Virus record (IMG/VR): IMGVR_UViG_3300029983_000007
Coordinates: 186,001 to 250,000 of that record
Length of the DNA: 64,000 nt
Direction: 5' to 3' (one strand)
Position 1 is the stretch's first letter; each line of letters begins with the position of its first letter. A model generated the notes under the pieces. The model had not been told where the DNA came from. It worked only from the letters and a program-made list of their open reading frames with translations, and searched no databases. Shown in pieces: positions 1,854-48,311 of this stretch. A program made the position numbers and the translations under genes.

Positions 1854-3151
1854 TGGGTAAAAAATCAAAAAATGATGTTTTTATTAAAAAGGCAATAGAG
1901 GTACATGGTAATAAATATGACTATAGTTTAGTAGAATATAAACATAATCAAACAAATGTTGAAATTGTGTGTAATGATTGCGGATATAAGTTTCTAAGGA
2001 CTCCACATTATCATCTAAAAAGAAATATTAACAATGGTTGTAAAAATTGTTATTCATTAGCAAGAATATTAACTACTGATATCTTTATTGAAAAAGCAAT
2101 AGAGGTACATGGGAATAAATATGATTATTCTTTAGTTAAATATGAAAAATCGAAGACTAAAATTAAAATTATTTGTCCAATTCACGGAGAGTTTGAACAA
2201 ATACCGAATTCTCATTTATCTGGACATGGGTGCGACAAATGTGGAAGTTTTTCGACAACATATAATTTTATAATAACAGCAAAAGAAATTCATTGTGGTA
2301 AGTATGATTATTCTTTAGTTAATTATATAGATAATAAAACTAAAGTAAAAATTATTTGTCCAACTCATGGTATATTTGAACAAACTCCAGGTGGACATTT
2401 ATTTGGTAGAGGATGTGAAAAATGTGCATTTGATGGTAGAAGAATATTATTAGAAGATTTTATAAAAAGATCAAAAAAAATACATAATGATAAATACGAT
2501 TATTCTTTAGTTGAATATTGTTATTCAACGGAAAAAGTAAAAATTATTTGTCCAACTCATGGTATATTTGAACAAACTCCAAGTGGACATTTAGTAGGAA
2601 AAGGATGTTCAAAATGTAAATTTGATAAACATAGATTATCTACTGATGAATTTATAAAAAGATCAAAAAAAATACATGAAGATAAATATGATTATTCTTT
2701 AATTGATTATATAGATGTTCATAATAAAGTAAAAATTGTTTGTCCAACACATGGTATATTTGAACAAAAGGCAAATTCTCATTTACATAATCATGGATGT
2801 CCGTATTGTAATGAAAGCTTTGGAGAGAAAAAAATAAATAGTTTTTTAAAAAATAAAAAAATATCATACATCAGAGAATTCTCATTCGATGATTGTGTAG
2901 GTAAAAATAATGTTAAATTAAGATTTGATTTTTATCTTATTAAATATAATATTTGTATTGAATTTGATGGTAAACAACATTTTATTGCGCCTGAACAATG
3001 GGGAGGAGATGAATATTTATTACATTCTAAAAAATTAGATAAAATAAAAAATGAATATTGTAAAAATAACAATATTCATTTATTAAGGATAAAATATACA
3101 AAAATTAATTATATTGATATAATATTATCTAGACTTTTAAAACTTTTATAG
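1853..3151 (+). CDS. homing-type endonuclease with about six Zn-binding repeats and a C-terminal Vsr/PD-(D/E)xK-like domain
   Basis: Repeats HGNKYDYSLV-Y...KVKIICPTHGIFEQTP..HL.G.GC.KC; C-terminal RFDFYL..YNICIEFDGKQHF...DKIKNEYC. Confidence 0.8.
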   Translation: MGKKSKNDVFIKKAIEVHGNKYDYSLVEYKHNQTNVEIVCNDCGYKFLRTPHYHLKRNINNGCKNCYSLARILTTDIFIEKAIEVHGNKYDYSLVKYEKSKTKIKIICPIHGEFEQIPNSHLSGHGCDKCGSFSTTYNFIITAKEIHCGKYDYSLVNYIDNKTKVKIICPTHGIFEQTPGGHLFGRGCEKCAFDGRRILLEDFIKRSKKIHNDKYDYSLVEYCYSTEKVKIICPTHGIFEQTPSGHLVGKGCSKCKFDKHRLSTDEFIKRSKKIHEDKYDYSLIDYIDVHNKVKIVCPTHGIFEQKANSHLHNHGCPYCNESFGEKKINSFLKNKKISYIREFSFDDCVGKNNVKLRFDFYLIKYNICIEFDGKQHFIAPEQWGGDEYLLHSKKLDKIKNEYCKNNNIHLLRIKYTKINYIDIILSRLLKLL

Positions 3152-4763
3152 AATTAATAAAGTGATTAGGTAATATATTAGAATTATATTTCAATAAATC
3201 AGAAAAATTTGAATCTAATATGAAAGTTTGACAATAATCAGTTTCACTGCGAATTCCGCGGCCAACTTCTTGAATTGTGTTAACACAGGCATTCCAGGCA
3301 TACCATTCAGGCTTAATTTTTTGTCTAGCTTTAATTTTTTTAGAACCAAGATTTGCGAAACTAATTTTTAGCACTATTTGAAAACGAGCTAACTCATCGT
3401 CTAATGAAATTCCTTCCATCATTGATGGACTGACTAAAACTGTTGCAGTTGTGCTTGTTAAATGTTTTTCAAGTATTTCATTTCTATCTTCAGTTGTATG
3501 AAATAATAGTCTTTCGTCCATAATGGTTTCTTTTAACCATTCTGTTATTTCATAATTTGATGTGTGAATTATACCTTTTTTATCTTTATATTTTGCTAAT
3601 ATTTTTTTTATCCATGGTACTTGATTTTTGAATGTCTCTTCTTTACTATAAAAAGACATCTTACCAAGCTTCATATAAAATATTGGATGATTCTTCAATT
3701 CAAACGGAGATTCAACTTCATAATAGCTTGTTAAATCTTCATCCAGTCCATTAATGAAACCAAACATCTTAGGATCCAATATTGTTGCAGACATGAAAAT
3801 TATATGATCATATTTTGACCAAACATATTCATTAAGGTACTCATATACTAATATATGTTCAGTTACCAACTCTATCCCACTATAATTCTTTTCAGTTTTA
3901 GATTTATTGATATCAAGAACTACATTATCAGGATCATTTTTATATGACTCAAATAAATGTTTAAACGCCAACAATTTACTATCAATATTTTGTAAATATT
4001 TAGATAATTCAACTTTCTGTTTTTGTTTTGATGAACCAGCAATATCTGACTCAAATTGTGTTCTTTTTTTCTCTAACATTGGAATTAACTTTCTTTCTAA
4101 AAATTCTAAATATTTGTCTAAAAATTTAATTTTTGATATATATTTACTATCAATTTCATCAATTTCTTTTAAACCAAATCCGCATTTTTTTAATGTTTTT
4201 GAACTTAATTTTGATGATAAGTAGGATGAGAATGTTTCTTCGAAGGATTGACATTCATCAATTATAAGTACATTACCATCTCTTCGTTTTAGTGTTTCTG
4301 TTTGAAATAATGATAATGTGTCAAATAGATGAAAATTTGTTAAGCCAATATCTCCAGATATCCATGAATTTTTTGCAATATCATATGGACATGCATCACA
4401 ATGTTTTTTCATTATTGTACATAATTCTTTAGCTGTACCACAATCGCAATCAAAATCTTTACAATAATAGTTAGATTTGCCCTTGTAATTGTTAATAAAC
4501 GGAAAATCTTTTATGTACTGATCTTGAAGAATCTTAGAACCTGTCAAAACGTCGAATTTTGCATCAGTATTCACAAATCCCCTATACCAATTTGCAAACA
4601 TCATAACAAGAAACGATTTTCCTGTTCCAGTAGGTAAGTTGCTCAATATGAATCTTTTGCCATTAGTTATACTGTCTTTCATGAAGTTTAATGCCTCAAC
4701 TTGATACGTTTTTGGTTCATATTTCAGAGGGAAAAAAACTTTTTTATCGTCTACTTTAATCAT
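3129..4763 (-). CDS. DinG/Rad3-like SF2 DNA helicase
   Basis: Walker A LPTGTGKS, Walker B IIDECQ, SAT, Cys cluster C-x4-C..C..C...CPY, C-terminal QEVGRGIRSETD...ILDS. Confidence 0.85.
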   Translation of the reverse strand: MIKVDDKKVFFPLKYEPKTYQVEALNFMKDSITNGKRFILSNLPTGTGKSFLVMMFANWYRGFVNTDAKFDVLTGSKILQDQYIKDFPFINNYKGKSNYYCKDFDCDCGTAKELCTIMKKHCDACPYDIAKNSWISGDIGLTNFHLFDTLSLFQTETLKRRDGNVLIIDECQSFEETFSSYLSSKLSSKTLKKCGFGLKEIDEIDSKYISKIKFLDKYLEFLERKLIPMLEKKRTQFESDIAGSSKQKQKVELSKYLQNIDSKLLAFKHLFESYKNDPDNVVLDINKSKTEKNYSGIELVTEHILVYEYLNEYVWSKYDHIIFMSATILDPKMFGFINGLDEDLTSYYEVESPFELKNHPIFYMKLGKMSFYSKEETFKNQVPWIKKILAKYKDKKGIIHTSNYEITEWLKETIMDERLLFHTTEDRNEILEKHLTSTTATVLVSPSMMEGISLDDELARFQIVLKISFANLGSKKIKARQKIKPEWYAWNACVNTIQEVGRGIRSETDYCQTFILDSNFSDLLKYNSNILPNHFINSIKVLKV

Positions 4764-13290: not shown

Positions 13291-15564
13291 ATGATAGAAA
13301 CATTAGTGTCTAATAGTAATGGAGTATCTTTAAAAACTCACTCGTTAGCTGTTCAAAAAATAGCAGTTATAATGGCTGAAAGATTAGGATTACCAATTGA
13401 TATACAAAATGCTATATCAAAAGCTGCTTTGTTACATGACATTGGAAAATCTTATATTCCTTTTCAAAATTATGTATCAAAAAAAGTTGTATCTGAAGAG
13501 TTTACTAATAATAAAATATTTCATCATGAAATTTCATGGGCTATACTTAGATATCTTATGAATATTGATAAAGATTATAATTATAGTATTTTATATTCTA
13601 TATATTGGCATCATTCCAGAGATATGAGTAATAAAAATAAAGAATATGCATCATCGATATTAGAAAAATTAACAGATGATGATAAACAAAGAGTATTAAC
13701 TGTGTATAATGAATTAACTGGTGAAAATAAAGTTTTATCAGATCTTGATGTTAATATCATGAATGATAAAATTCCTGATTATTATATAAATAAAGATGAT
13801 AAAATTTGTTCATTGAATATTATTGTTATGTCTTGTGTAGTTTCTTCAGATAGATATGTATCATCAATAAATATAGACCAGAATAAAATTTTAATTGATG
13901 ATAATTATTGTAATGAAATTGTTGATTCTATAGATTATTCTCCTACAAAAAATTATATAACACCAAAAAATTATGATATTGATCGTTTTAATTATCAATT
14001 ATCTTGTGCTGGTGATATAAATAGTAATCAAACTTCTGAATTGAAAGCACCTGCTGGTTATGGTAAAACTATTAATGGCTTACTTGCTTGGATTAAATCT
14101 GGGAATAGAAAATTAATTTGGGTTTGTCCAAGAAATACAATAGCGGAAACTCTATTTGATGGTGTTAAAAATGAACTTAATGCATTAAGTATCAATAATA
14201 TTAGTGTTGAATTGTTTCTTACTGGAGAAAGACGTGATATTTATAATGAAAACAATAATATAGATTTCACATCGGATATTATAATCACTAATATTGATAA
14301 TTTTTTGACTCCTACCATTAATAATTTTGTTAGAGATAGAATGTACTCATTATTATCAAGTTATGTTATTTTTGATGAATTTCATGAATTAGTTGCGTCT
14401 GAGCCGTACTTTGCTTGTTTTGTTAATATCATGAATGTTAGACATAGATATACAAATAGTAAAACATTACTGATGAGTGCGACCCCTACAATGATGACAA
14501 ATTTATGGGATAACTCAATTAAAGGAACTGCTATTTTACCAAATGAAACTAATCATTATAATGCTGCTCATTCTAAGAAATTTAGAATAAATTTCTTAGA
14601 TGATATAACTTTAGTAAATCCTCAACTAAATAGTTTATTTATAACAAATTCAATAAAATCTTCTCAAACAAAAACTATTGATGACGATTATTCAGTTATA
14701 GCGCATAGTAAATATATGATTGATGACAGAAAGTGTATAATTGATAGTATATTTGATATGTATGGTAAAAATAAGAAGATTCAAAATAAATTAGATGTTA
14801 TATCTGCGCCATTGATTCAAGCTGCTATGGATTTATCTTTTGGTATTATGACTGAAATTCCTAAATCTCCAGAAGATACATTTCAAAGATTGGGTAGACT
14901 TAATAGATGGGGAGAATATGATGTAGTTGATTATAATATTTTAGTTAATATTAATGATAAAAAAATAAATTTAAGTGAATTAGCTTCAATTAATCTTACT
15001 TATGACATAAAATTAAATAAATTGTGGATTGATTATTTAAAAAATAATATTATTGATAAATATGAATATACATTAGATGAATTGTACATTAAATACAATG
15101 TTTTTAATTCAATGTATAAAAAAGAAATAAATGAATATATTAATGATAGATACATTAAAAGTAGAGAATCATTATCTAAATTATTTCCAAGAAAATATAT
15201 AAATAAAGATACAAAAAAAATAGTATCATCAGGTTCTAAACTTAGGGACAATGGATCAAATAATATTTATTGTATATATAAAATATATAATACTGATGAG
15301 TATACAGATGTATTTAGTATTGATTCTAATGGTTCAGATATGGATAAACATGAAGATAATACTACTCAAACTAATCAGATTCGTTCTATTAAGAAATTGT
15401 TAACTGATAGTAGATTTGAATATAATAAACATAGATTATTAACAGGTAACAAATTTACTAGTAATAAATTATTTGAATCTGCAAAAAATCCTAAGACTCC
15501 ATATATTTGTTACCATAAAGAATATCATCCAAAATTAGGGCTTATATCAATTTATTTATTATAA
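13291..15564 (+). CDS. cas3: CRISPR-associated HD nuclease/SF2 helicase Cas3
   Basis: HD domain: LKTH, ALLHDIGK, HHEIS, WHHS, SSDR; helicase: APAGYGKT, DEFH, SAT, QAAMDLS, QRLGRLNRWG. Confidence 0.95.
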   Translation: MIETLVSNSNGVSLKTHSLAVQKIAVIMAERLGLPIDIQNAISKAALLHDIGKSYIPFQNYVSKKVVSEEFTNNKIFHHEISWAILRYLMNIDKDYNYSILYSIYWHHSRDMSNKNKEYASSILEKLTDDDKQRVLTVYNELTGENKVLSDLDVNIMNDKIPDYYINKDDKICSLNIIVMSCVVSSDRYVSSINIDQNKILIDDNYCNEIVDSIDYSPTKNYITPKNYDIDRFNYQLSCAGDINSNQTSELKAPAGYGKTINGLLAWIKSGNRKLIWVCPRNTIAETLFDGVKNELNALSINNISVELFLTGERRDIYNENNNIDFTSDIIITNIDNFLTPTINNFVRDRMYSLLSSYVIFDEFHELVASEPYFACFVNIMNVRHRYTNSKTLLMSATPTMMTNLWDNSIKGTAILPNETNHYNAAHSKKFRINFLDDITLVNPQLNSLFITNSIKSSQTKTIDDDYSVIAHSKYMIDDRKCIIDSIFDMYGKNKKIQNKLDVISAPLIQAAMDLSFGIMTEIPKSPEDTFQRLGRLNRWGEYDVVDYNILVNINDKKINLSELASINLTYDIKLNKLWIDYLKNNIIDKYEYTLDELYIKYNVFNSMYKKEINEYINDRYIKSRESLSKLFPRKYINKDTKKIVSSGSKLRDNGSNNIYCIYKIYNTDEYTDVFSIDSNGSDMDKHEDNTTQTNQIRSIKKLLTDSRFEYNKHRLLTGNKFTSNKLFESAKNPKTPYICYHKEYHPKLGLISIYLL

Positions 15565-28078: not shown

Positions 28079-29004
28079 GAAGTCGTCTTGACTTTTTGAG
28101 GAGGGAAACAATATTTAAAAGAAGGGAACGTTTTGTATGCGACAAAACAACAATAACATTCCCTTCATGGTGTACCAAGTACTTGACAAAGATACAATAA
28201 GAATTGAAATACTGCCTCATTTATCGGTAGCAAAAAGAGGTTTTAAGACCACAAGTTGTCTGATTGAAGTAGTAAATAGCATTTTATATAAGCTGAAAAC
28301 AGGCTGTCAATGGTATCTGTTGCCAGTAAGAAGTTTGTTCTCAGATGTAGTCTTAAGCCATAAAACCATTTTTGGTCATTTTCGCAAATGGTGTAAGAGT
28401 GGTGAGTGGGAATACTGTTGGACGAAAATACTGGAAAAATACAAGTCGTTCTTGGATTTATCTAGTGCCGACTTGGATGGTAGTCATGCCACAGCACTTC
28501 GCGGAGGCGAAGAAGTGGCTTATCAGGGTAGGAAGAAAAGGAAAACGACAAATTCTTTGTTTCTTTCTGACCGACAGGGTTTACCTTTAGCTTTATCAAA
28601 TCCAATTGCAGGTAACCATAATGATTTATATGCAATTGAGAAATCCTCAGAAGAACTATTTTCAACTTTAGGGGAGGCAAAGATTAGTACAGATGGTCTT
28701 TTTATTAATGCTGATTCTGGTTTTGATTCAAAAAACTTTCGATCGATTTGTGAAAAATGGGGAGTAATTCCCAATGTTGCTTTCAACTATCGCAATGGTG
28801 AAAACAAAGATGAGTATTTATTAGATGATTTACTTTACAAACAAAGATACGTCATTGAAAGAACAAATGCTTGGATGGACAGTTTCAGATCGCTGCTTAA
28901 TAGATTTGATTATACGGTTTCAAGCTGGAAAAGCTTCAATTACATAGCTTTTATGATTATATTATTCAAGAAAATTAAAACTAACAAAAAGTCAAGATGA
29001 CTTC
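28079..29004 (+). mobile_element. IS5-family insertion sequence, 926 bp
   Basis: 19-bp terminal inverted repeats GAAGTCGTCTTGACTTTTT / AAAAAGTCAAGATGACTTC (1 mismatch), 3-bp direct repeat ATT on both sides, GC content above the flanks. Confidence 0.92.
28137..29000 (+). CDS. tnp: IS5-family DDE transposase
   Basis: LYKLKTGCQWYLLP, FRKWCKSG, LDGSH, GNHND, ADSGFD, RYVIERTNAWM. Confidence 0.95.
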   Translation: MRQNNNNIPFMVYQVLDKDTIRIEILPHLSVAKRGFKTTSCLIEVVNSILYKLKTGCQWYLLPVRSLFSDVVLSHKTIFGHFRKWCKSGEWEYCWTKILEKYKSFLDLSSADLDGSHATALRGGEEVAYQGRKKRKTTNSLFLSDRQGLPLALSNPIAGNHNDLYAIEKSSEELFSTLGEAKISTDGLFINADSGFDSKNFRSICEKWGVIPNVAFNYRNGENKDEYLLDDLLYKQRYVIERTNAWMDSFRSLLNRFDYTVSSWKSFNYIAFMIILFKKIKTNKKSR

Positions 29005-31320: not shown

Positions 31321-31513
31321 TAAAATTATATTACTATATACATTACAATAAAAAATTAAAATTCTTATGAATAACAATATCTCAAATATGATTCAGCAAC
31401 AACAACAAACTTACGTTTGATTGGGTTAGCATCATGTTTGTTTTTCACCCAATCCTGAAATGGTTTGGGTTTTTTTGTGCCCAACTTTTTAAGTTGGGTT
31501 TTTTGTTAAATAC

Positions 31514-31584
31514 TGCTCTATGTTGTAATGATAGCAATCAGGAATTTGGATCCTGCAGATTAGGTTTGAGTCCTAATAGAGCAA
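31514..31584 (+). tRNA. trnQ: tRNA-Gln(UUG), atypical
   Basis: Acceptor TGCTCTA/TAGAGCA, anticodon arm CAGGA-ATTTGGA-TCCTG, T arm TTAGG-TTTGAGT-CCTAA; A19/U56 compensatory pair; no encoded CCA. Confidence 0.8.
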
Positions 31585-31598
31585 CAACACAATGTCAC

Positions 31599-31683
31599 TG
31601 CCTTGTGATGGAATTGGTTAAACATGTCAGTCTTTGAAACTGATGCTCATATGAGCTTGTGGGTTCGAATCCCACTAAGGCGA
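31599..31683 (+). tRNA. class II-like (long variable arm) tRNA with Gln anticodon UUG
   Basis: Acceptor TGCCTTG/TAAGGCG, D loop AATTGGTTAAA, anticodon arm TCAGT-CTTTGAA-ACTGA, variable hairpin GCTC-ATAT-GAGC, T arm GTGGG-TTCGAAT-CCCAC. Confidence 0.85.
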
Positions 31684-31693
31684 CAAATTATAT

Positions 31694-31766
31694 TGTTCAT
31701 TAGCGCAATTGGTAGAGCGTCAGATTCTGGATCTGAAGGTTGAAAGTCCGAATCTTTCATGAATAA
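31694..31766 (+). tRNA. trnQ: tRNA-Gln(CUG)
   Basis: Acceptor TGTTCAT/ATGAATA, D arm GCGC-AATTGGTA-GAGC, anticodon arm TCAGA-TTCTGGA-TCTGA, T arm GAAAG-TCCGAAT-CTTTC. Confidence 0.8.
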
Positions 31767-31775
31767 CAAATACAT

Positions 31776-31847
31776 TCTCATATTGTATAACGGCTATTAC
31801 ATTTGTTTTTGGAACAAATAATCTAGGTTCAACTCCTAGTGTGAGAA
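31776..31847 (+). tRNA. trnQ: tRNA-Gln(UUG)
   Basis: Acceptor TCTCATA/TGTGAGA, anticodon arm TTTGT-TTTTGGA-ACAAA, T arm CTAGG-TTCAACT-CCTAG. Confidence 0.8.
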
Positions 31848-31885
31848 CAAAAAACTCTGAAATTTAAATTTCAGAGTTTTTTTTA
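31848..31885. terminator. bidirectional terminator after the tRNA cluster
   Basis: AAAAACTCTGAAATTT/AAATTTCAGAGTTTTT inverted repeat. Confidence 0.75.
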
Positions 31886-35803: not shown

Positions 35804-36580
35804 TTAAAATGGATAATCATTTTTAATATCAGATTTATAATATTTTTCATATTCATCATCAGTCCATATTTTATAATTATAGTTAGGTTTTAATTCTAAT
35901 GATAATATTTTCATCATTCTTTCAATTTTAATTTTTTTATTATTAATTAAATTGGTTATTCGTATATAATAAGATGGTTCTAAATTAGTCCAGCCTCTTT
36001 TAGTTAACTTATTCTCTCTGAAATTTGTTCTCTCTATATTGTATAATGTTGCCCAGTTATTAACTTGAAATGTTTTTGATAAACATTGAATTATAGCATC
36101 TTTACAAGATTCTTTAAGTAATATTATATCATAACATTTTTCAATAAAAACACCACAGCAGGACAAATCAACATTTTTAATTAGAGAATAATATGCATTT
36201 TTATAAAGTTTATATGCATCAAGTTTCCTTACGTCTCCAAATGATGGTCTGATTATTTGAATAATTTTATTGTTTTTATTTATTAATGTCCAAGGATCTT
36301 GAATAATTGATATTCCTTTATACATATTTAATGTATCTATATCATACAAATCTATAATTTTATAATCTTTACAATTAATTAAAAATGTTCTTAGTATTTC
36401 TGCAGATTTAGGCATACAAAGAATATCCACATCGTGAATATCAAGTCCTGCTATACTATCTCTAACCGCTCCTCCATATATGGTGATACAATCTGATTGA
36501 TTAAATAATTCCTTTATATCGAATTCAATATATTCTGTAATTTTTTTTGTAATATTATTTGTAATTTCTTCTAATTTCAT
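35804..36580 (-). CDS. Pol-beta-family nucleotidyltransferase (CCA-adding/poly(A) polymerase head-like)
   Basis: YGGAVRD..AG..IHDVDI motif; later DLSC.G equivalent to DFTIN. Confidence 0.7.
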   Translation of the reverse strand: MKLEEITNNITKKITEYIEFDIKELFNQSDCITIYGGAVRDSIAGLDIHDVDILCMPKSAEILRTFLINCKDYKIIDLYDIDTLNMYKGISIIQDPWTLINKNNKIIQIIRPSFGDVRKLDAYKLYKNAYYSLIKNVDLSCCGVFIEKCYDIILLKESCKDAIIQCLSKTFQVNNWATLYNIERTNFRENKLTKRGWTNLEPSYYIRITNLINNKKIKIERMMKILSLELKPNYNYKIWTDDEYEKYYKSDIKNDYPF

Positions 36581-47339: not shown

Positions 47340-48311
47340 TTATTCTTCACTATCAATATCAAAGAAATTATTAGCATCATCATCATCTCCTCCAAAAGTA
47401 TCTTCGTTGTTTTTAACATTTTTTGATTCTTTTGTTGAAACATTGTCATTAGATGAGCTTTCTGCTTCTTTTTTAGCAAAAGATGTTTCATTACCAGAAA
47501 TAATGTCAAGTATTTGAGATACTTTATATTTATCTTCAGCTAACCATTCTTTTGGTTGATGATCTTCAAGATCTACTGTACGTTCTTTCAAAAACGACAT
47601 AACTTTTTCTTTAACTTTAGGATTTGTGATTTTATTCTTTCCTGTTTTTTCGTCAATTTCAACTGGAACCTTAGCTAATCCCTTTGGTGTCATAATTTTG
47701 ATAGGAGATACTTCTAAGAAAGTACTTGAGTCATAATTAGGATATTCACCAAGTTGCTTCATAACCAATTTAAAATCCCTTCCGTTTGCGAGATCGAAAA
47801 CATTGCATGGATCACCAGAAATACCATCTTTTTGATCTTTGATTTTTTCTTTGATTTTGTAACCATAAGGATAGATTAAAATCTTACCTTCTGCATCACG
47901 ATTTTGTTCATCTTCAACAACTAAAATATAAGAATAATATTTAGTACTTCTACTAATTAATTCTGCTTTTTCAACTTCAGATGCGTTTTTTGAGTTCTTC
48001 AATTTCCAATACATTGTACAGATATCACATTTGTCTGTGAAATTTTTCATACAATCATAGTAACCTTGAAGTTCTGGATGATTTTTAAAATCAACATAGT
48101 GTTGATGTTTTTCGATTGCAGATAATGATACTTTACCATCTTTTGTAAGATTAGGTAAAAACCTAATGGTTGCAACATAACCTTTCTTTTTGTCAGTAAT
48201 TTTTGGACGATAAATACCATCTAAACTACCACCTTTTTTTTCTAGAAAATCTAGTGTTTCGCTTTGTGCGTCAATTGAGTCGAATAAATCGACATTTTCA
48301 AATTCTTTCAT
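47340..48311 (-). CDS. T4 gp32-like single-stranded DNA-binding protein
   Basis: IRFLP, C.IC, S.KYYSYILVV.D, G..FKL, YPNYDSS.F, acidic C-tail DDDDANNFFDIDSEE. Confidence 0.85.
   Translation of the reverse strand: MKEFENVDLFDSIDAQSETLDFLEKKGGSLDGIYRPKITDKKKGYVATIRFLPNLTKDGKVSLSAIEKHQHYVDFKNHPELQGYYDCMKNFTDKCDICTMYWKLKNSKNASEVEKAELISRSTKYYSYILVVEDEQNRDAEGKILIYPYGYKIKEKIKDQKDGISGDPCNVFDLANGRDFKLVMKQLGEYPNYDSSTFLEVSPIKIMTPKGLAKVPVEIDEKTGKNKITNPKVKEKVMSFLKERTVDLEDHQPKEWLAEDKYKVSQILDIISGNETSFAKKEAESSSNDNVSTKESKNVKNNEDTFGGDDDDANNFFDIDSEE

What the first reader, a model, noticed from the sequence alone, without database searches (positions are those of the whole stretch)
31599..31683. Leu/Ser-type long-variable-arm tRNA carrying a Gln (UUG) anticodon
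Seen: an 85-nt tRNA with a GCTC-ATAT-GAGC variable hairpin, a Leu-like D loop (GGAATTGGTTAAAC), A73, a U1:G72 pair and loop CT-TTG-AA. Established: tRNA-Gln is class I; LeuRS and SerRS largely ignore the anticodon and read A73/tertiary shape or the long arm. Inference: it may be charged with Leu or Ser and mistranslate CAA codons (allo-tRNA-like), or act as a nuclease decoy.
Basis: partly seen in the sequence, partly recalled or inferred. Interest (0 to 1): 0.7.

Follow-up and report, generated by a model that had tools for sequence, protein, structure and literature searches.

The report
Long-armed glutamine tRNA in giant phage
A giant peat-bog phage carries a real, conserved tRNA that has the long-armed shape normally reserved for leucine/serine tRNAs but a glutamine anticodon and a glutamine-type acceptor end, so it most likely delivers glutamine rather than causing mistranslation, and it belongs to a widespread, apparently undescribed family of such tRNAs in large phages.

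Summary
Window 31599-31683 is an 85-nt class II (long variable arm) tRNA with anticodon UUG, U1·G72 and A73. It matches the Rfam tRNA model at 51.9 bits and sits among three ordinary tRNA-Gln genes in a 330-kb phage fragment that uses the standard genetic code. Contigs from three further peat metagenomes, a second co-occurring strain and another assembly all carry TTG, so this is not a sequencing error.

Its body is closest to phage tRNA-Leu. Its anticodon loop is a Leu(UAG) loop with A35U. Its first two acceptor pairs, however, have changed from the Leu type (G1-C72, C2-G71) to the Gln type (U1·G72, G2-C71).

It belongs to a homologous family found in at least 35 mostly large viral contigs. 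The family shows strong covariation, including in the variable arm. G2-C71 is nearly invariant, the 1:72 pair is never G-C, and N73 is often G or U, which is incompatible with LeuRS.

Across phages, 44 of 45 distinct long-armed UUG tRNAs lack G1, against 12 of 66 Leu tRNAs. CAA sites in the phage's proteins evolve like polar Gln sites.

Best reading: a Leu-derived, class II-shaped tRNA-Gln charged by host GlnRS. Charging is untested, so Leu or dual charging, or a decoy role, remain possible.

The parts
31599..31683 (+). Class II-shaped tRNA with Gln anticodon UUG (85 nt to A73; no encoded CCA).
   Evidence: ARAGORN; Rfam 51.9 bits; covariation in family alignment A1.
31599..31605 (+). Acceptor 5' strand TGCCTTG. 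It pairs with 31676-31682 (TAAGGCG), giving U1·G72, G2-C71 and C3-G70.
   Evidence: Sequence. Leu relatives have GCCCTTG/CGAGGGC. Pair 2:71 is G-C in 13 of 14 family members, and pair 1:72 is never G-C.
31608..31625 (+). Leu-type D arm: 3-bp stem ATG/CAT and loop GAATTGGTTAAA, with one more nucleotide after G18G19 than typical Leu tRNAs.
31627..31643 (+). Anticodon arm TCAGT-CTTTGAA-ACTGA, with anticodon TTG at 31634-31636. The loop equals a phage Leu(UAG) loop, CTTAGAA, with A35 changed to U.
   Evidence: TTG is confirmed in other metagenomes.
31644..31658 (+). Long variable arm T-GCTC-ATAT-GAGC-TT: 4-bp stem and tetraloop, 15 nt, the same length as in Leu tRNAs.
   Evidence: Both basal pairs covary across the family.
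31659..31675 (+). T arm GTGGG-TTCGAAT-CCCAC with a canonical T loop.
31683..31683 (+). Discriminator A73. This is the same base as in the three neighbouring class I tRNA-Gln genes and in the candidate host's tRNA-Gln. It is also the Leu discriminator.
31514..31585 (+). Class I tRNA-Gln(UUG), first gene of the four-tRNA cluster (acceptor TGCTCTA, A73).
31694..31767 (+). Class I tRNA-Gln(CUG).
31776..31848 (+). Class I tRNA-Gln(UUG).
31479..31499 (+). Terminator-like hairpin followed by a T run, immediately upstream of the tRNA cluster.
31850..31885 (.). A/T-flanked hairpin (AAAAAACTCTGAAATTTAAATTTCAGAGTTTTTTTT) just downstream of the cluster. It is probably a bidirectional terminator.
   Evidence: Read directly from the sequence. 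The terminator scan did not flag it, because the stem has few G-C pairs.

Best explanation
This is a functional glutamine tRNA built on a class II (long variable arm) scaffold.

Origin: it most likely arose from a phage tRNA-Leu(UAG)-type gene by alloacceptor remolding. Three changes are visible. The anticodon changed A35 to U (UAG to UUG). The first two acceptor pairs changed from G1-C72/C2-G71 to U1·G72/G2-C71. The D loop gained one nucleotide.

Proposed working: it is transcribed with three class I tRNA-Gln genes as a small tRNA cluster and processed by host RNases. It receives CCA after transcription, because the gene encodes none and the phage carries a CCA-adding-type nucleotidyltransferase. 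The host GlnRS then charges it with glutamine. GlnRS reads U35/G36, needs a weak 1:72 pair and G2-C71, and binds with the variable-arm side facing solvent. The tRNA then reads CAA, and possibly CAG, as Gln.

Benefit: it raises UUG-decoding capacity for a very AT-rich phage, in which about 87% of Gln codons are CAA against about 48% in the candidate host. It also gives the phage a tRNA-Gln whose shape differs from the host's, which may keep Gln decoding going if host tRNA-Gln is depleted or cleaved.

Shown here: the structure, conservation, Leu-like ancestry, Gln-type acceptor features, family distribution, and the Gln-like nature of CAA sites.

Inferred: the aminoacylation outcome, expression and processing, and any anti-defence benefit.
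For: 1. It is a real, conserved tRNA.

2. The body is Leu-derived. The 5' half is 86% identical to tRNA-Leu(UAG) of Aeromonas phage APT65, whose loop CTTAGAA differs from CTTTGAA only at position 35. The nearest bodies in the phage tRNA set are all Leu.

3. The acceptor end has been switched. Leu relatives have GCCCTTG/CGAGGGC; this tRNA has TGCCTTG/TAAGGCG. The candidate host tRNA-Gln begins TGTC with A73, and the adjacent class I tRNA-Gln begins TGC with A73.

4. It belongs to a homologous family: 12 distinct sequences in 35 of 44 viral contigs from a complete scan. In the 14-sequence alignment built from that family, pair 1:72 is U-A 8, U·G 3, A-U 1, G·U 1, A·C 1, and never G-C. Pair 2:71 is G-C in 13 of 14, while pairs 3-7 vary freely. 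N73 is A, G or U.

5. Across all distinct phage long-arm UUG tRNAs (n=45), position 1 is not G in 44, against 12 of 66 Leu tRNAs (Fisher p = 1e-18). N73 is not A in 28 of 45, against 2 of 66 Leu tRNAs (p = 2e-12). Class I Gln tRNAs show the same U1 and G2-C71 pattern.

6. A D-loop scan that did not fix the anticodon found three more UUG members, one CAU member and no Leu anticodons.

7. Codon test: at 179 aligned CAA sites, related phages have Q 61%, E 15%, K 7%, N 4%, R 3% and L 2%. The phage uses the standard code.

8. Closest relatives (L323 in 3 contigs, L321 in 7 contigs) differ only in loops or by a pair-improving U66C change, while neighbouring proteins are only 47-92% identical.

9. 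The candidate host, Paludibacter, has a GlnRS-type gene. No aaRS was found in the phage fragment.

10. Published experiments show that a class II tRNA-Ser amber suppressor became a glutamine acceptor after two acceptor-pair changes. E. coli GlnRS relies on the acceptor stem, N73, U35 and G36 (review PMC9976931).

11. Codon demand: CAA is 21.0 and CAG 3.0 per 1000 codons in the phage, against 15.6 and 16.9 in host-like loci. The Leu(UAG) codons CTA and CTG are rare in the phage.
Against: - No charging, expression or proteomic data exist, and no RNA run was listed.
- This member keeps A73, A15, U48 and G18G19, which are the main E. coli LeuRS determinants. LeuRS ignores the anticodon, so some leucylation cannot be excluded.
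- It has A10-U25, whereas E. coli and the candidate host tRNA-Gln have G10, a GlnRS contact.
- Its 1:72 pair is U·G rather than the canonical U-A.
- It has A37 where the host and the neighbouring tRNA-Gln genes have G37.
- The discriminator of long-arm UUG tRNAs matched that of class I Gln tRNAs in the same locus in only 11 of 18 cases (permutation p = 0.09).
- Family members with G73 plus a long arm plus G2-C71 could in principle be SerRS substrates.
- The host assignment rests only on a shared IS transposase.
- Several retrieval patterns fixed the UUG anticodon, so anticodon invariance is partly by construction.
Confidence: 0.55

Rival explanations
1. Leu-charged, or dual Leu/Gln-charged, missense tRNA. 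Host LeuRS recognises A73 and the Leu-type tertiary core, ignores the anticodon, and loads Leu. A fraction of CAA codons would then be read as Leu, as with the nematode nev-tRNAs.
For: - The body is Leu-type, with A73, A15, U48, G18G19 and a Leu-length arm.
- E. coli LeuRS needs neither the anticodon nor the long arm (PMC9976931).
- nev-tRNAs set a precedent: class II tRNAs with Gly or Ile anticodons that are charged with Leu (PMC3333845 abstract).
Against: - The first two acceptor pairs were converted to the Gln pattern, which takes four substitutions, two of them compensatory.
- The extra D-loop nucleotide puts U, not A, at position 20a. A20a is essential for E. coli LeuRS.
- Homologous family members have G73 or U73.
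- CAA makes up about 87% of Gln codons and sits at polar sites, with Leu at only 2% of aligned positions. Leu insertion would therefore damage the phage's own proteome, yet the gene is conserved.
Confidence: 0.2
2. A non-decoding role. The tRNA-shaped RNA would act as a decoy or sponge for a host tRNA-targeting defence nuclease or toxin, or as a cofactor or primer for a phage enzyme, rather than serving mainly in translation.
For: - Phage tRNAs are known to counter tRNA-cleaving defences (abstracts of PMC10264068, PMC11555353 and PMC13096335).
- Four different bodies carry Gln anticodons in one cluster.
- Large phage tRNA arrays often carry a long-arm and a short-arm version of the same anticodon.
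Against: - All translation-relevant features are kept and covary: a 7/5 acceptor/T helix, U33, a 7-nt anticodon loop, a canonical T loop, and Gln-type acceptor identity. A pure decoy would not obviously need synthetase identity elements.
- No Gln-specific nuclease is known or was found for this host.
Confidence: 0.15
3. Ser-charged tRNA. SerRS would recognise the long arm and ignore the anticodon.
For: It has a long variable arm and G2-C71. C2-G71 is an anti-determinant against SerRS in E. coli tRNA-Leu.
Against: - It has A73 rather than G73.
- The arm is only 15 nt with a 4-bp stem, as in Leu tRNAs. The candidate host's tRNA-Ser genes are visibly longer (88-91 nt against 83-85 nt for its tRNA-Leu), which implies longer arms.
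- It has U1 rather than G1.
Confidence: 0.04
4. An assembly or sequencing error, or a decaying pseudogene of tRNA-Leu(UAG).
For: The loop differs from a Leu(UAG) loop by a single base.
Against: - The identical sequence occurs in an independent contig and in three other samples, and a second strain keeps TTG.
- The family is conserved with compensatory changes.
- Relatives differ only by loop or pair-preserving substitutions.
Confidence: 0.02

Closest known systems
Bacterial tRNA-Gln (GlnRS substrate), including the experimental conversion of a class II tRNA-Ser amber suppressor to glutamine identity (review PMC9976931)
   Same: It has a YUG anticodon with U35 and G36, a weak first pair with U1, G2-C71, and the same discriminator as the host's tRNA-Gln. 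The experiment shows that GlnRS can accept a long-armed tRNA once the acceptor pairs are changed.
   Different: Natural tRNA-Gln is class I, with a 4-5 nt variable loop. This one has a 15-nt arm, a Leu-type D arm, A10-U25 instead of G10, U·G instead of U-A at 1:72, and A37.
Bacterial and phage tRNA-Leu, especially Leu(UAG)
   Same: The D arm, the variable-arm length and position, the T arm, A73 and most of the anticodon arm are the same. The 5' half is 86% identical to Aeromonas phage APT65 tRNA-Leu(UAG).
   Different: The anticodon is UUG, not NAG or YAA. The acceptor end is U1·G72/G2-C71 instead of G1-C72/C2-G71. The D loop has an extra nucleotide.
Alloacceptor tRNA remolding / anticodon shifts (PMC4783518, PMC3923123)
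   Same: The body is more related to another acceptor family than to tRNAs that share its anticodon. The anticodon substitution is accompanied by changes to identity elements.
   Different: Remolding has been described in mitochondria and eukaryotic nuclear genomes, usually within class I. Here it occurs in phages and crosses the class II to class I boundary.
Nematode nev-tRNAs (PMC3333845) and other non-canonical V-arm tRNAs of eukaryotes
   Same: They are class II tRNAs whose anticodons are neither Leu nor Ser.
   Different: nev-tRNAs keep Leu identity and are charged with Leu. This family has lost the Leu acceptor pattern, and often A73, and has gained Gln features. It is also bacterial-viral, not eukaryotic.
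allo-tRNAs (PMC5389517)
   Same: They have a long variable arm with diverse non-Ser anticodons, and were found in metagenomes and some phages.
   Different: allo-tRNAs have 8/4 or 9/3 acceptor/T helices, Sec-like D arms and mostly G73 or U73 Ser identity. This tRNA is a canonical 7/5 tRNA with a Leu-type D arm.
Phage tRNAs that escape tRNA-targeting defences (PMC10264068, PMC11555353)
   Same: It is a phage-encoded isoacceptor whose sequence differs from the host tRNA, including anticodon-loop positions 32, 37 and 38.
   Different: The known cases differ by point changes in class I bodies. Here the whole architecture class differs, and no cognate nuclease is known.

Membership tests
tRNA (Rfam RF00005, canonical 7/5 cloverleaf) | Score above the gathering threshold. 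Seven-bp acceptor stem and 5-bp T stem, with U8, A14, G18G19, U33 and a GTTCRANYC-type T loop. | tested here: met
   51.9 bits against 29; ARAGORN structure; 99.4% of cells paired across 14 homologues.
Class II (long variable arm) tRNA | Variable region of 10 nt or more that forms a stem-loop. | tested here: met
   15 nt, GCTC-ATAT-GAGC. Both basal variable-arm pairs covary.
Bacterial tRNA-Leu | Leu anticodon (NAG or YAA). | tested here: not met
   The anticodon is UUG in the window, in L003, in three other metagenomes and in all family members.
Bacterial tRNA-Leu | Discriminator A73. | tested here: met
   A at 31683. However, many homologues have G73 or U73.
Bacterial tRNA-Leu | Tertiary core used by E. 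coli LeuRS: A15-U48, G18G19 and A20a, in a Leu-type D loop. | tested here: inconclusive
   A15, G18G19 and U48 are present. One extra nucleotide follows G19, which puts U at 20a. The identity rule comes from PMC9976931.
Bacterial tRNA-Leu | Typical acceptor end with G1 paired to C72 or U72. | tested here: not met
   U1·G72 and G2-C71 here. Of 66 phage Leu tRNAs, 54 have G1 and only 1 has U1.
Bacterial tRNA-Leu | Leucylation by LeuRS. | not testable with these tools
   This needs a biochemical assay.
Bacterial tRNA-Gln (GlnRS type) | Anticodon YUG (U35, G36). | tested here: met
   TTG at 31634-31636.
Bacterial tRNA-Gln (GlnRS type) | Weak first pair with U1 (canonically U1-A72). | tested here: met
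   U1·G72 here. The family has U-A, U·G, A-U or A·C and never G-C. Class I Gln tRNAs have U1 in 36 of 38. The exact U-A pair is not present in this member.
Bacterial tRNA-Gln (GlnRS type) | G2-C71. | tested here: met
   G2-C71 here and in 13 of 14 homologues. The host tRNA-Gln and the neighbouring class I Gln tRNA have it too.
Bacterial tRNA-Gln (GlnRS type) | The same discriminator as the host's tRNA-Gln. | tested here: met
   A73 in this tRNA, in the three neighbouring Gln tRNAs and in the two Paludibacter tRNA-Gln genes. Across phages the match is 11 of 18, which is not significant.
Bacterial tRNA-Gln (GlnRS type) | G10 (the 10-25 pair contacted by GlnRS). | tested here: not met
   A10-U25 here. 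In the family it is A-U in 7 and G-C in 7. The host tRNA-Gln has G10.
Bacterial tRNA-Gln (GlnRS type) | Class I architecture (variable loop of 4-5 nt). | tested here: not met
   15-nt arm.
Bacterial tRNA-Gln (GlnRS type) | Glutaminylation by GlnRS. | not testable with these tools
allo-tRNA | 8/4 or 9/3 acceptor/T-stem composition. | tested here: not met
   7/5.
Bacterial tRNA-Ser | G73 and a long arm whose stem is longer than in Leu tRNAs. | tested here: not met
   A73 and a 4-bp, 15-nt arm. The candidate host's tRNA-Ser genes are 88-91 nt, against 83-85 nt for its tRNA-Leu.
nev-tRNA-like missense class II tRNA | A class II tRNA with a non-Leu, non-Ser anticodon that retains full Leu identity. 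| tested here: inconclusive
   The first part is met. Leu identity is only partly retained: A73 is kept, but the acceptor pairs are switched and the D loop is altered.

The most novel reading that the evidence does not exclude
Large phages may systematically uncouple tRNA architecture from amino-acid identity. On this reading they maintain a parallel, shape-shifted tRNA set: class II-shaped Gln, Asn, Glu, Met, Pro, Thr and Lys tRNAs, and class I-shaped Leu tRNAs, often next to a normally shaped copy with the same anticodon. Host synthetases would still charge these correctly, but nucleases that read tRNA shape would not recognise them. Those could be host tRNA-targeting immune nucleases, or a phage nuclease that destroys host tRNAs. 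The long-armed tRNA-Gln family would be the commonest member of this set.
Probability: 0.25. Interest if true: 0.85.

Novelty: new variant of a known kind. Interest (0 to 1): 0.62.

Why it matters
Textbook rules say that in bacteria only Leu, Ser, Tyr and Sec tRNAs have a long variable arm.

A conserved phage family of long-armed tRNAs with a Gln anticodon and Gln-type acceptor elements would be a natural counter-example. It would be the natural counterpart of the classic laboratory switch of a class II suppressor to glutamine identity. It would also be a clear case of alloacceptor remolding across the class I/class II boundary in viruses.

The practical consequences are threefold:
- tRNA annotation pipelines that infer identity from shape will mislabel these genes.
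- The family offers GlnRS substrates with a free arm that could carry tags or orthogonal handles.
- Together with the short-armed Leu tRNAs and the long/short pairs in huge-phage arrays, it gives a concrete, testable lead on why phages carry redundant tRNAs. The candidates are codon supply, escape from tRNA-targeting immunity, or both.

If the tRNA were instead charged with Leu, it would be the first phage-encoded proteome-wide missense tRNA.

Tried and rejected
- **Stop-codon recoding.** Rejected. Stop-to-stop ORFs of 100 aa or more cover about 86% of the genome under code 11, and reading TAG or TGA as sense adds no long ORFs.
- **Scan GGAATTGGN{11,16}CTTTGA.** It gave almost only chance hits, with 2 tRNAs in 116 loci.
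- **Discriminator match test.** Comparing N73 between long-arm and class I Gln tRNAs of the same locus gave 11 of 18 matches, p = 0.09. This is not significant and is not used as support.
- **Phage-encoded synthetases.** Searches for GluRS/GlnRS, class Ia and class IIa families found none in the 330-kb fragment, which is about 46% of the genome, so absence is not shown.
- **Cultured phages.** None has a family member. The best matches are Leu tRNAs.
- **Cellular genomes.** A pattern search in 401 Bacteroidales genomes gave one match, and it is not a tRNA.
- **Expression.** No RNA sequencing run was listed, so expression is untested.
- **Parental Leu gene.** ARAGORN at relaxed thresholds called a weak Leu(UAG)-like 81-nt candidate at genome 58382-58462. 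It has three acceptor mismatches and is not similar to this tRNA, so it was rejected as a parental copy.
- **Literature.** Six full-text searches found no description of long-armed tRNA-Gln in phages. Absence from the held library does not prove novelty.
- **Complex prediction with GlnRS.** Not attempted, because the tool gives no verdict for RNA partners.
Full report
**Context**

The window is bases 186001-250000 of a 330,208-bp IMG/VR virus record. It has 24% G+C, and CheckV estimates it to be 46% complete. So it is a fragment of a very large phage.

The phage uses the standard genetic code. Stop-to-stop ORFs of at least 100 aa cover about 86% of the genome under table 11. Reading TAG or TGA as sense adds no long ORFs.

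An IS4/5 transposase at window 28137-29000 is 98% identical to one in a Paludibacter MAG. The same IS appears to be multicopy (many matches at contig ends) in an uncultured Bacteroidales bin. The host is therefore probably Paludibacter or a related Bacteroidales bacterium.

The phage sequence occurs in at least 13 peat metagenome runs and in some lake-water runs.

**The observation**

The 85 nt at 31599-31683 fold into a canonical 7/5 cloverleaf with these parts:
- Acceptor TGCCTTG/TAAGGCG, giving U1·G72 and G2-C71.
- A 3-bp D stem with loop GAATTGGTTAAA.
- Anticodon arm TCAGT-CTTTGAA-ACTGA, with TTG at 31634-31636.
- A 15-nt variable arm, T-GCTC-ATAT-GAGC-TT.
- T arm GTGGG-TTCGAAT-CCCAC, then A73.

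ARAGORN calls it tRNA-Gln(ttg), and Rfam's tRNA model scores it 51.9 bits.

- An independent contig (L003) is identical.
- Contigs from three other peat samples match 31450-31878 exactly.
- A second co-occurring strain has T31618C in the D loop but keeps TTG.

**What surrounds it**

It is the second of four adjacent tRNA genes that all carry Gln anticodons: UUG, UUG (long arm), CUG and UUG, at 31514-31848. Hairpins bracket the cluster.

Elsewhere the same phage carries long-armed tRNAs with Met (CAU, 88 nt), Asn (GUU, 89 nt, next to a normal 75-nt Asn) and Glu (UUC, 86 nt) anticodons. The finding is therefore one instance of a pattern, not an isolated oddity.

No GluRS/GlnRS, class Ia or class IIa synthetase was found in the fragment. 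A CCA-adding-type nucleotidyltransferase is present, which fits tRNA genes that lack an encoded CCA.

**Ancestry of the scaffold**

- The 5' half is 86% identical to tRNA-Leu(UAG) of Aeromonas phage APT65. That tRNA's anticodon arm, CCAGT-CTTAGAA-ACTGG, differs in the loop only at position 35.
- I compared acceptor, D arm and T arm with about 470 other phage and candidate-host tRNAs. The five nearest bodies were all Leu.
- The variable arm has the length of the candidate host's Leu arms, not of its longer Ser arms.

**The acceptor end is not Leu-like**

The nearest Leu tRNAs have GCCCTTG/CGAGGGC, that is, G1-C72 and C2-G71. This tRNA has TGCCTTG/TAAGGCG, that is, U1·G72 and G2-C71, with positions 3-7 of the 5' strand unchanged. 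The conversion takes four substitutions, two of them compensatory.

The result is the pattern of the Paludibacter tRNA-Gln genes (TGTCTCA... with A73) and of the adjacent class I tRNA-Gln (TGCTCTA... with A73).

The D loop also has one more nucleotide after G18G19 than typical Leu tRNAs, which puts U at the position of A20a. According to the identity review PMC9976931:
- E. coli LeuRS depends on A73, A15-U48, G18G19 and A20a, and not on the anticodon or the arm.
- E. coli GlnRS depends on the acceptor stem, N73, the 10-25 pair, U35 and G36.
- A class II tRNA-Ser amber suppressor was converted to glutamine identity by changing two acceptor pairs.

It is established structural knowledge, not tested here, that class I synthetases such as GlnRS bind with the variable region facing solvent.

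**A homologous family**

A complete scan of IMG/VR for the D loop plus the UUG anticodon loop found 44 contigs. Thirty-five of them hold an ARAGORN-called long-armed UUG tRNA, giving 12 distinct sequences. Most of these contigs are 100-350 kb.

The closest relatives (L323 in 3 contigs, L321 in 7 contigs) differ from the window tRNA only in loops or by U66C, which turns G7·U66 into G7-C66. The neighbouring proteins are only 47-92% identical.

For 14 aligned members fitted to the class II cloverleaf:
- 99.4% of cells are paired.
- 18 of 22 pairs show double changes.
- The covariation score is 0.786, against 0.273 for shuffles (0 of 500 reach it) and 0.13-0.19 for slid controls.
- Both basal variable-arm pairs covary.

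Two acceptor pairs behave differently from the rest. Pair 2:71 is G-C in 13 of 14 members, although pairs 3-7 change freely. Pair 1:72 is U-A 8, U·G 3, A-U 1, G·U 1 and A·C 1, and never G-C or C-G. N73 is A, G or U.

A weak first pair plus a fixed G2-C71 is the Gln signature. G73 or U73 is incompatible with Leu identity.

**The wider picture**

The distinct tRNAs pooled from these loci compare as follows.

| Set | n | Position 1 | 2:71 | N73 |
|---|---|---|---|---|
| Long-arm UUG | 45 | U 42, A 2, G 1 | G-C in 38 | G 20, A 17, U 8 |
| Class I Gln | 38 | U 36 | G-C in 25 | A 25, G 8, U 5 |
| Leu | 66 | G 54, C 9 | not compared here | A 64 |

The Fisher test for a non-G first base (long-arm UUG against Leu) gives p = 1e-18. 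For a non-A discriminator it gives p = 2e-12.

Many long-arm UUG tRNAs are plainly ordinary tRNA-Gln bodies with a hairpin inserted in the variable loop. For example, the L005 tRNA aligns end to end with class I tRNA-Gln of cultured phages. Others, like the window's, are Leu- or Ser-type bodies with a Gln-type acceptor end. Class II-shaped tRNA-Gln therefore seems to have arisen more than once.

Of 86 non-canonical long-arm tRNAs, 84% form a hairpin of at least 3 bp in the variable region, against 39% of shuffles.

The same pattern found no tRNA in 401 Bacteroidales genomes. No cultured phage has a family member.

**What CAA means in this phage**

I aligned window ORFs to syntenic genes of related phages, which gave 67 distinct HSPs. 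The 179 CAA positions align with Q 61%, E 15%, K 7%, N 4%, R 3% and L 2%. By contrast, TTA aligns with L 78%, I 8%, S 3% and F 3%. CAA sites are therefore polar, Gln-like sites.

CAA is 21.0 and CAG 3.0 per 1000 codons in the phage, against 15.6 and 16.9 in Paludibacter loci. CTA and CTG, the codons of a Leu(UAG) tRNA, are rare in the phage.

A tRNA inserting Leu at CAA would therefore hit the phage's main Gln codon throughout its proteome, yet the gene is conserved. A Leu(UAG) gene, on the other hand, would be of little use to this phage and so free to be recruited for another role.

The candidate host has a GlnRS-type gene.

**Conclusion and limits**

The best-supported reading is a Leu-derived, class II-shaped tRNA-Gln(UUG) that the host GlnRS charges and that reads CAA. 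It would add decoding capacity for an AT-rich phage and provide a tRNA-Gln of a different shape.

Not shown: aminoacylation, expression (no RNA run was listed) and any anti-defence benefit.

This particular member keeps A73 and much of the Leu core, has A10 instead of G10, and has U·G rather than U-A at 1:72. Partial leucylation therefore remains a live rival, which I put at about 0.2. A decoy role gets about 0.15. Ser charging and artefact are unlikely.

The discriminator-matching test was not significant. Several retrieval patterns fixed the anticodon, so anticodon invariance is partly by construction.

**Novelty**

Six full-text searches found allo-tRNAs, nev-tRNAs, alloacceptor remolding and phage tRNAs that evade nucleases. 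None described long-armed tRNA-Gln in phages.

I rate it a new variant of a known kind. It is a non-canonical variable-arm tRNA, but one with a canonical 7/5 frame and switched, Gln-type acceptor identity. It is widespread in large phages.

Noticed in passing
G000 contig 1, 57751-57838, 57990-58078 and 58201-58286 (minus strand; locus L001): The same phage has three more long-armed tRNAs with class I anticodons: CAU (88 nt), GUU/Asn (89 nt, adjacent to a normal 75-nt tRNA-Asn that also has G73) and UUC/Glu (86 nt). The Glu tRNA's body is nearest to ordinary tRNA-Glu, and the Asn tRNA's top hit is tRNA-Asn. That looks like an arm inserted into a normal body rather than a Leu scaffold.
   Followed up: partly
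Many phage loci, e.g. L338, L343, L347 and L333; also L465 (published 642-kb uncultured phage LR756502.1, 398897-404974): tRNA arrays of large phages often hold two copies of the same anticodon with different architecture. Examples are long and short Gln(UUG), Asn(GUU), Pro(UGG), Thr(UGU), Leu(UAA), Leu(UAG) and Leu(AAG).
   Followed up: partly
L120 1500-1576 (Aeromonas phage APT65 tRNA-Leu(UAG), 77 nt), plus 25 distinct short-arm Leu tRNAs in the fetched phage loci: This is the opposite anomaly. These phage tRNA-Leu genes have a Leu-type D arm and A73 but only a 4-5 nt variable loop, which makes them class I-shaped. They are annotated simply as tRNA-Leu in GenBank.
   Followed up: partly
window 13291-15564 (+): A 757-aa ORF with an HD domain, a DEAD/ResIII helicase domain and a Cas3 C-terminal domain. 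It is a Cas3-like nuclease-helicase encoded by the phage. I did not look for a CRISPR array or other cas genes.
   Followed up: no
window 28137-29000 (+): An IS4/5-family DDE transposase, 98% identical to one in a Paludibacter MAG. The same IS appears to be multicopy (many matches at contig ends) in an uncultured Bacteroidales bin. Local G+C is 0.30 against about 0.22 in the neighbouring windows. It is a recent host-to-phage (or phage-to-host) IS transfer and a useful clue to the host.
   Followed up: partly
G000 contig 1, 58720-58788 and 58807-58875 (minus strand): Two identical 69-nt tRNA(CAU) copies in tandem. They have an initiator-like GGG/CCC anticodon stem but a shortened, irregular T arm. 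Rfam scores each 42.6 bits, and ARAGORN finds them only at relaxed settings.
   Followed up: no
G000 contig 1, 294792-295205 (minus strand); window 35804-36580 (-): There is a clear PolyA_pol/CCA-adding-type nucleotidyltransferase (72.8 bits) elsewhere in the phage. A second ORF 4 kb from the Gln cluster gives only a weak match (about 17 bits). The tRNA genes lack an encoded CCA.
   Followed up: partly
window 31514-31585 and 31694-31767: Two of the neighbouring class I tRNA-Gln genes have non-canonical elbows. The first has no G18G19 and a TTTGAGT T loop. The CUG tRNA has TCCGAAT, with C at position 55. The long-armed tRNA has the most canonical D and T loops of the four.
   Followed up: no
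G000 contig 1, 320693-321145 (locus L002): tRNA-like genes with very long insertions. One is a 90-nt call with anticodon AAA and an A/T-rich 21-nt variable region. Another is a 100-nt Rfam hit with a roughly 30-nt insertion at the variable position. These may be introns or degenerate copies.
   Followed up: no
window 47340-48311 (-) and 3129-4763 (-): A T4 gp32-like single-strand DNA-binding protein and a DinG/XPD-type helicase. These are ordinary replication genes and confirm the phage context.
   Followed up: no
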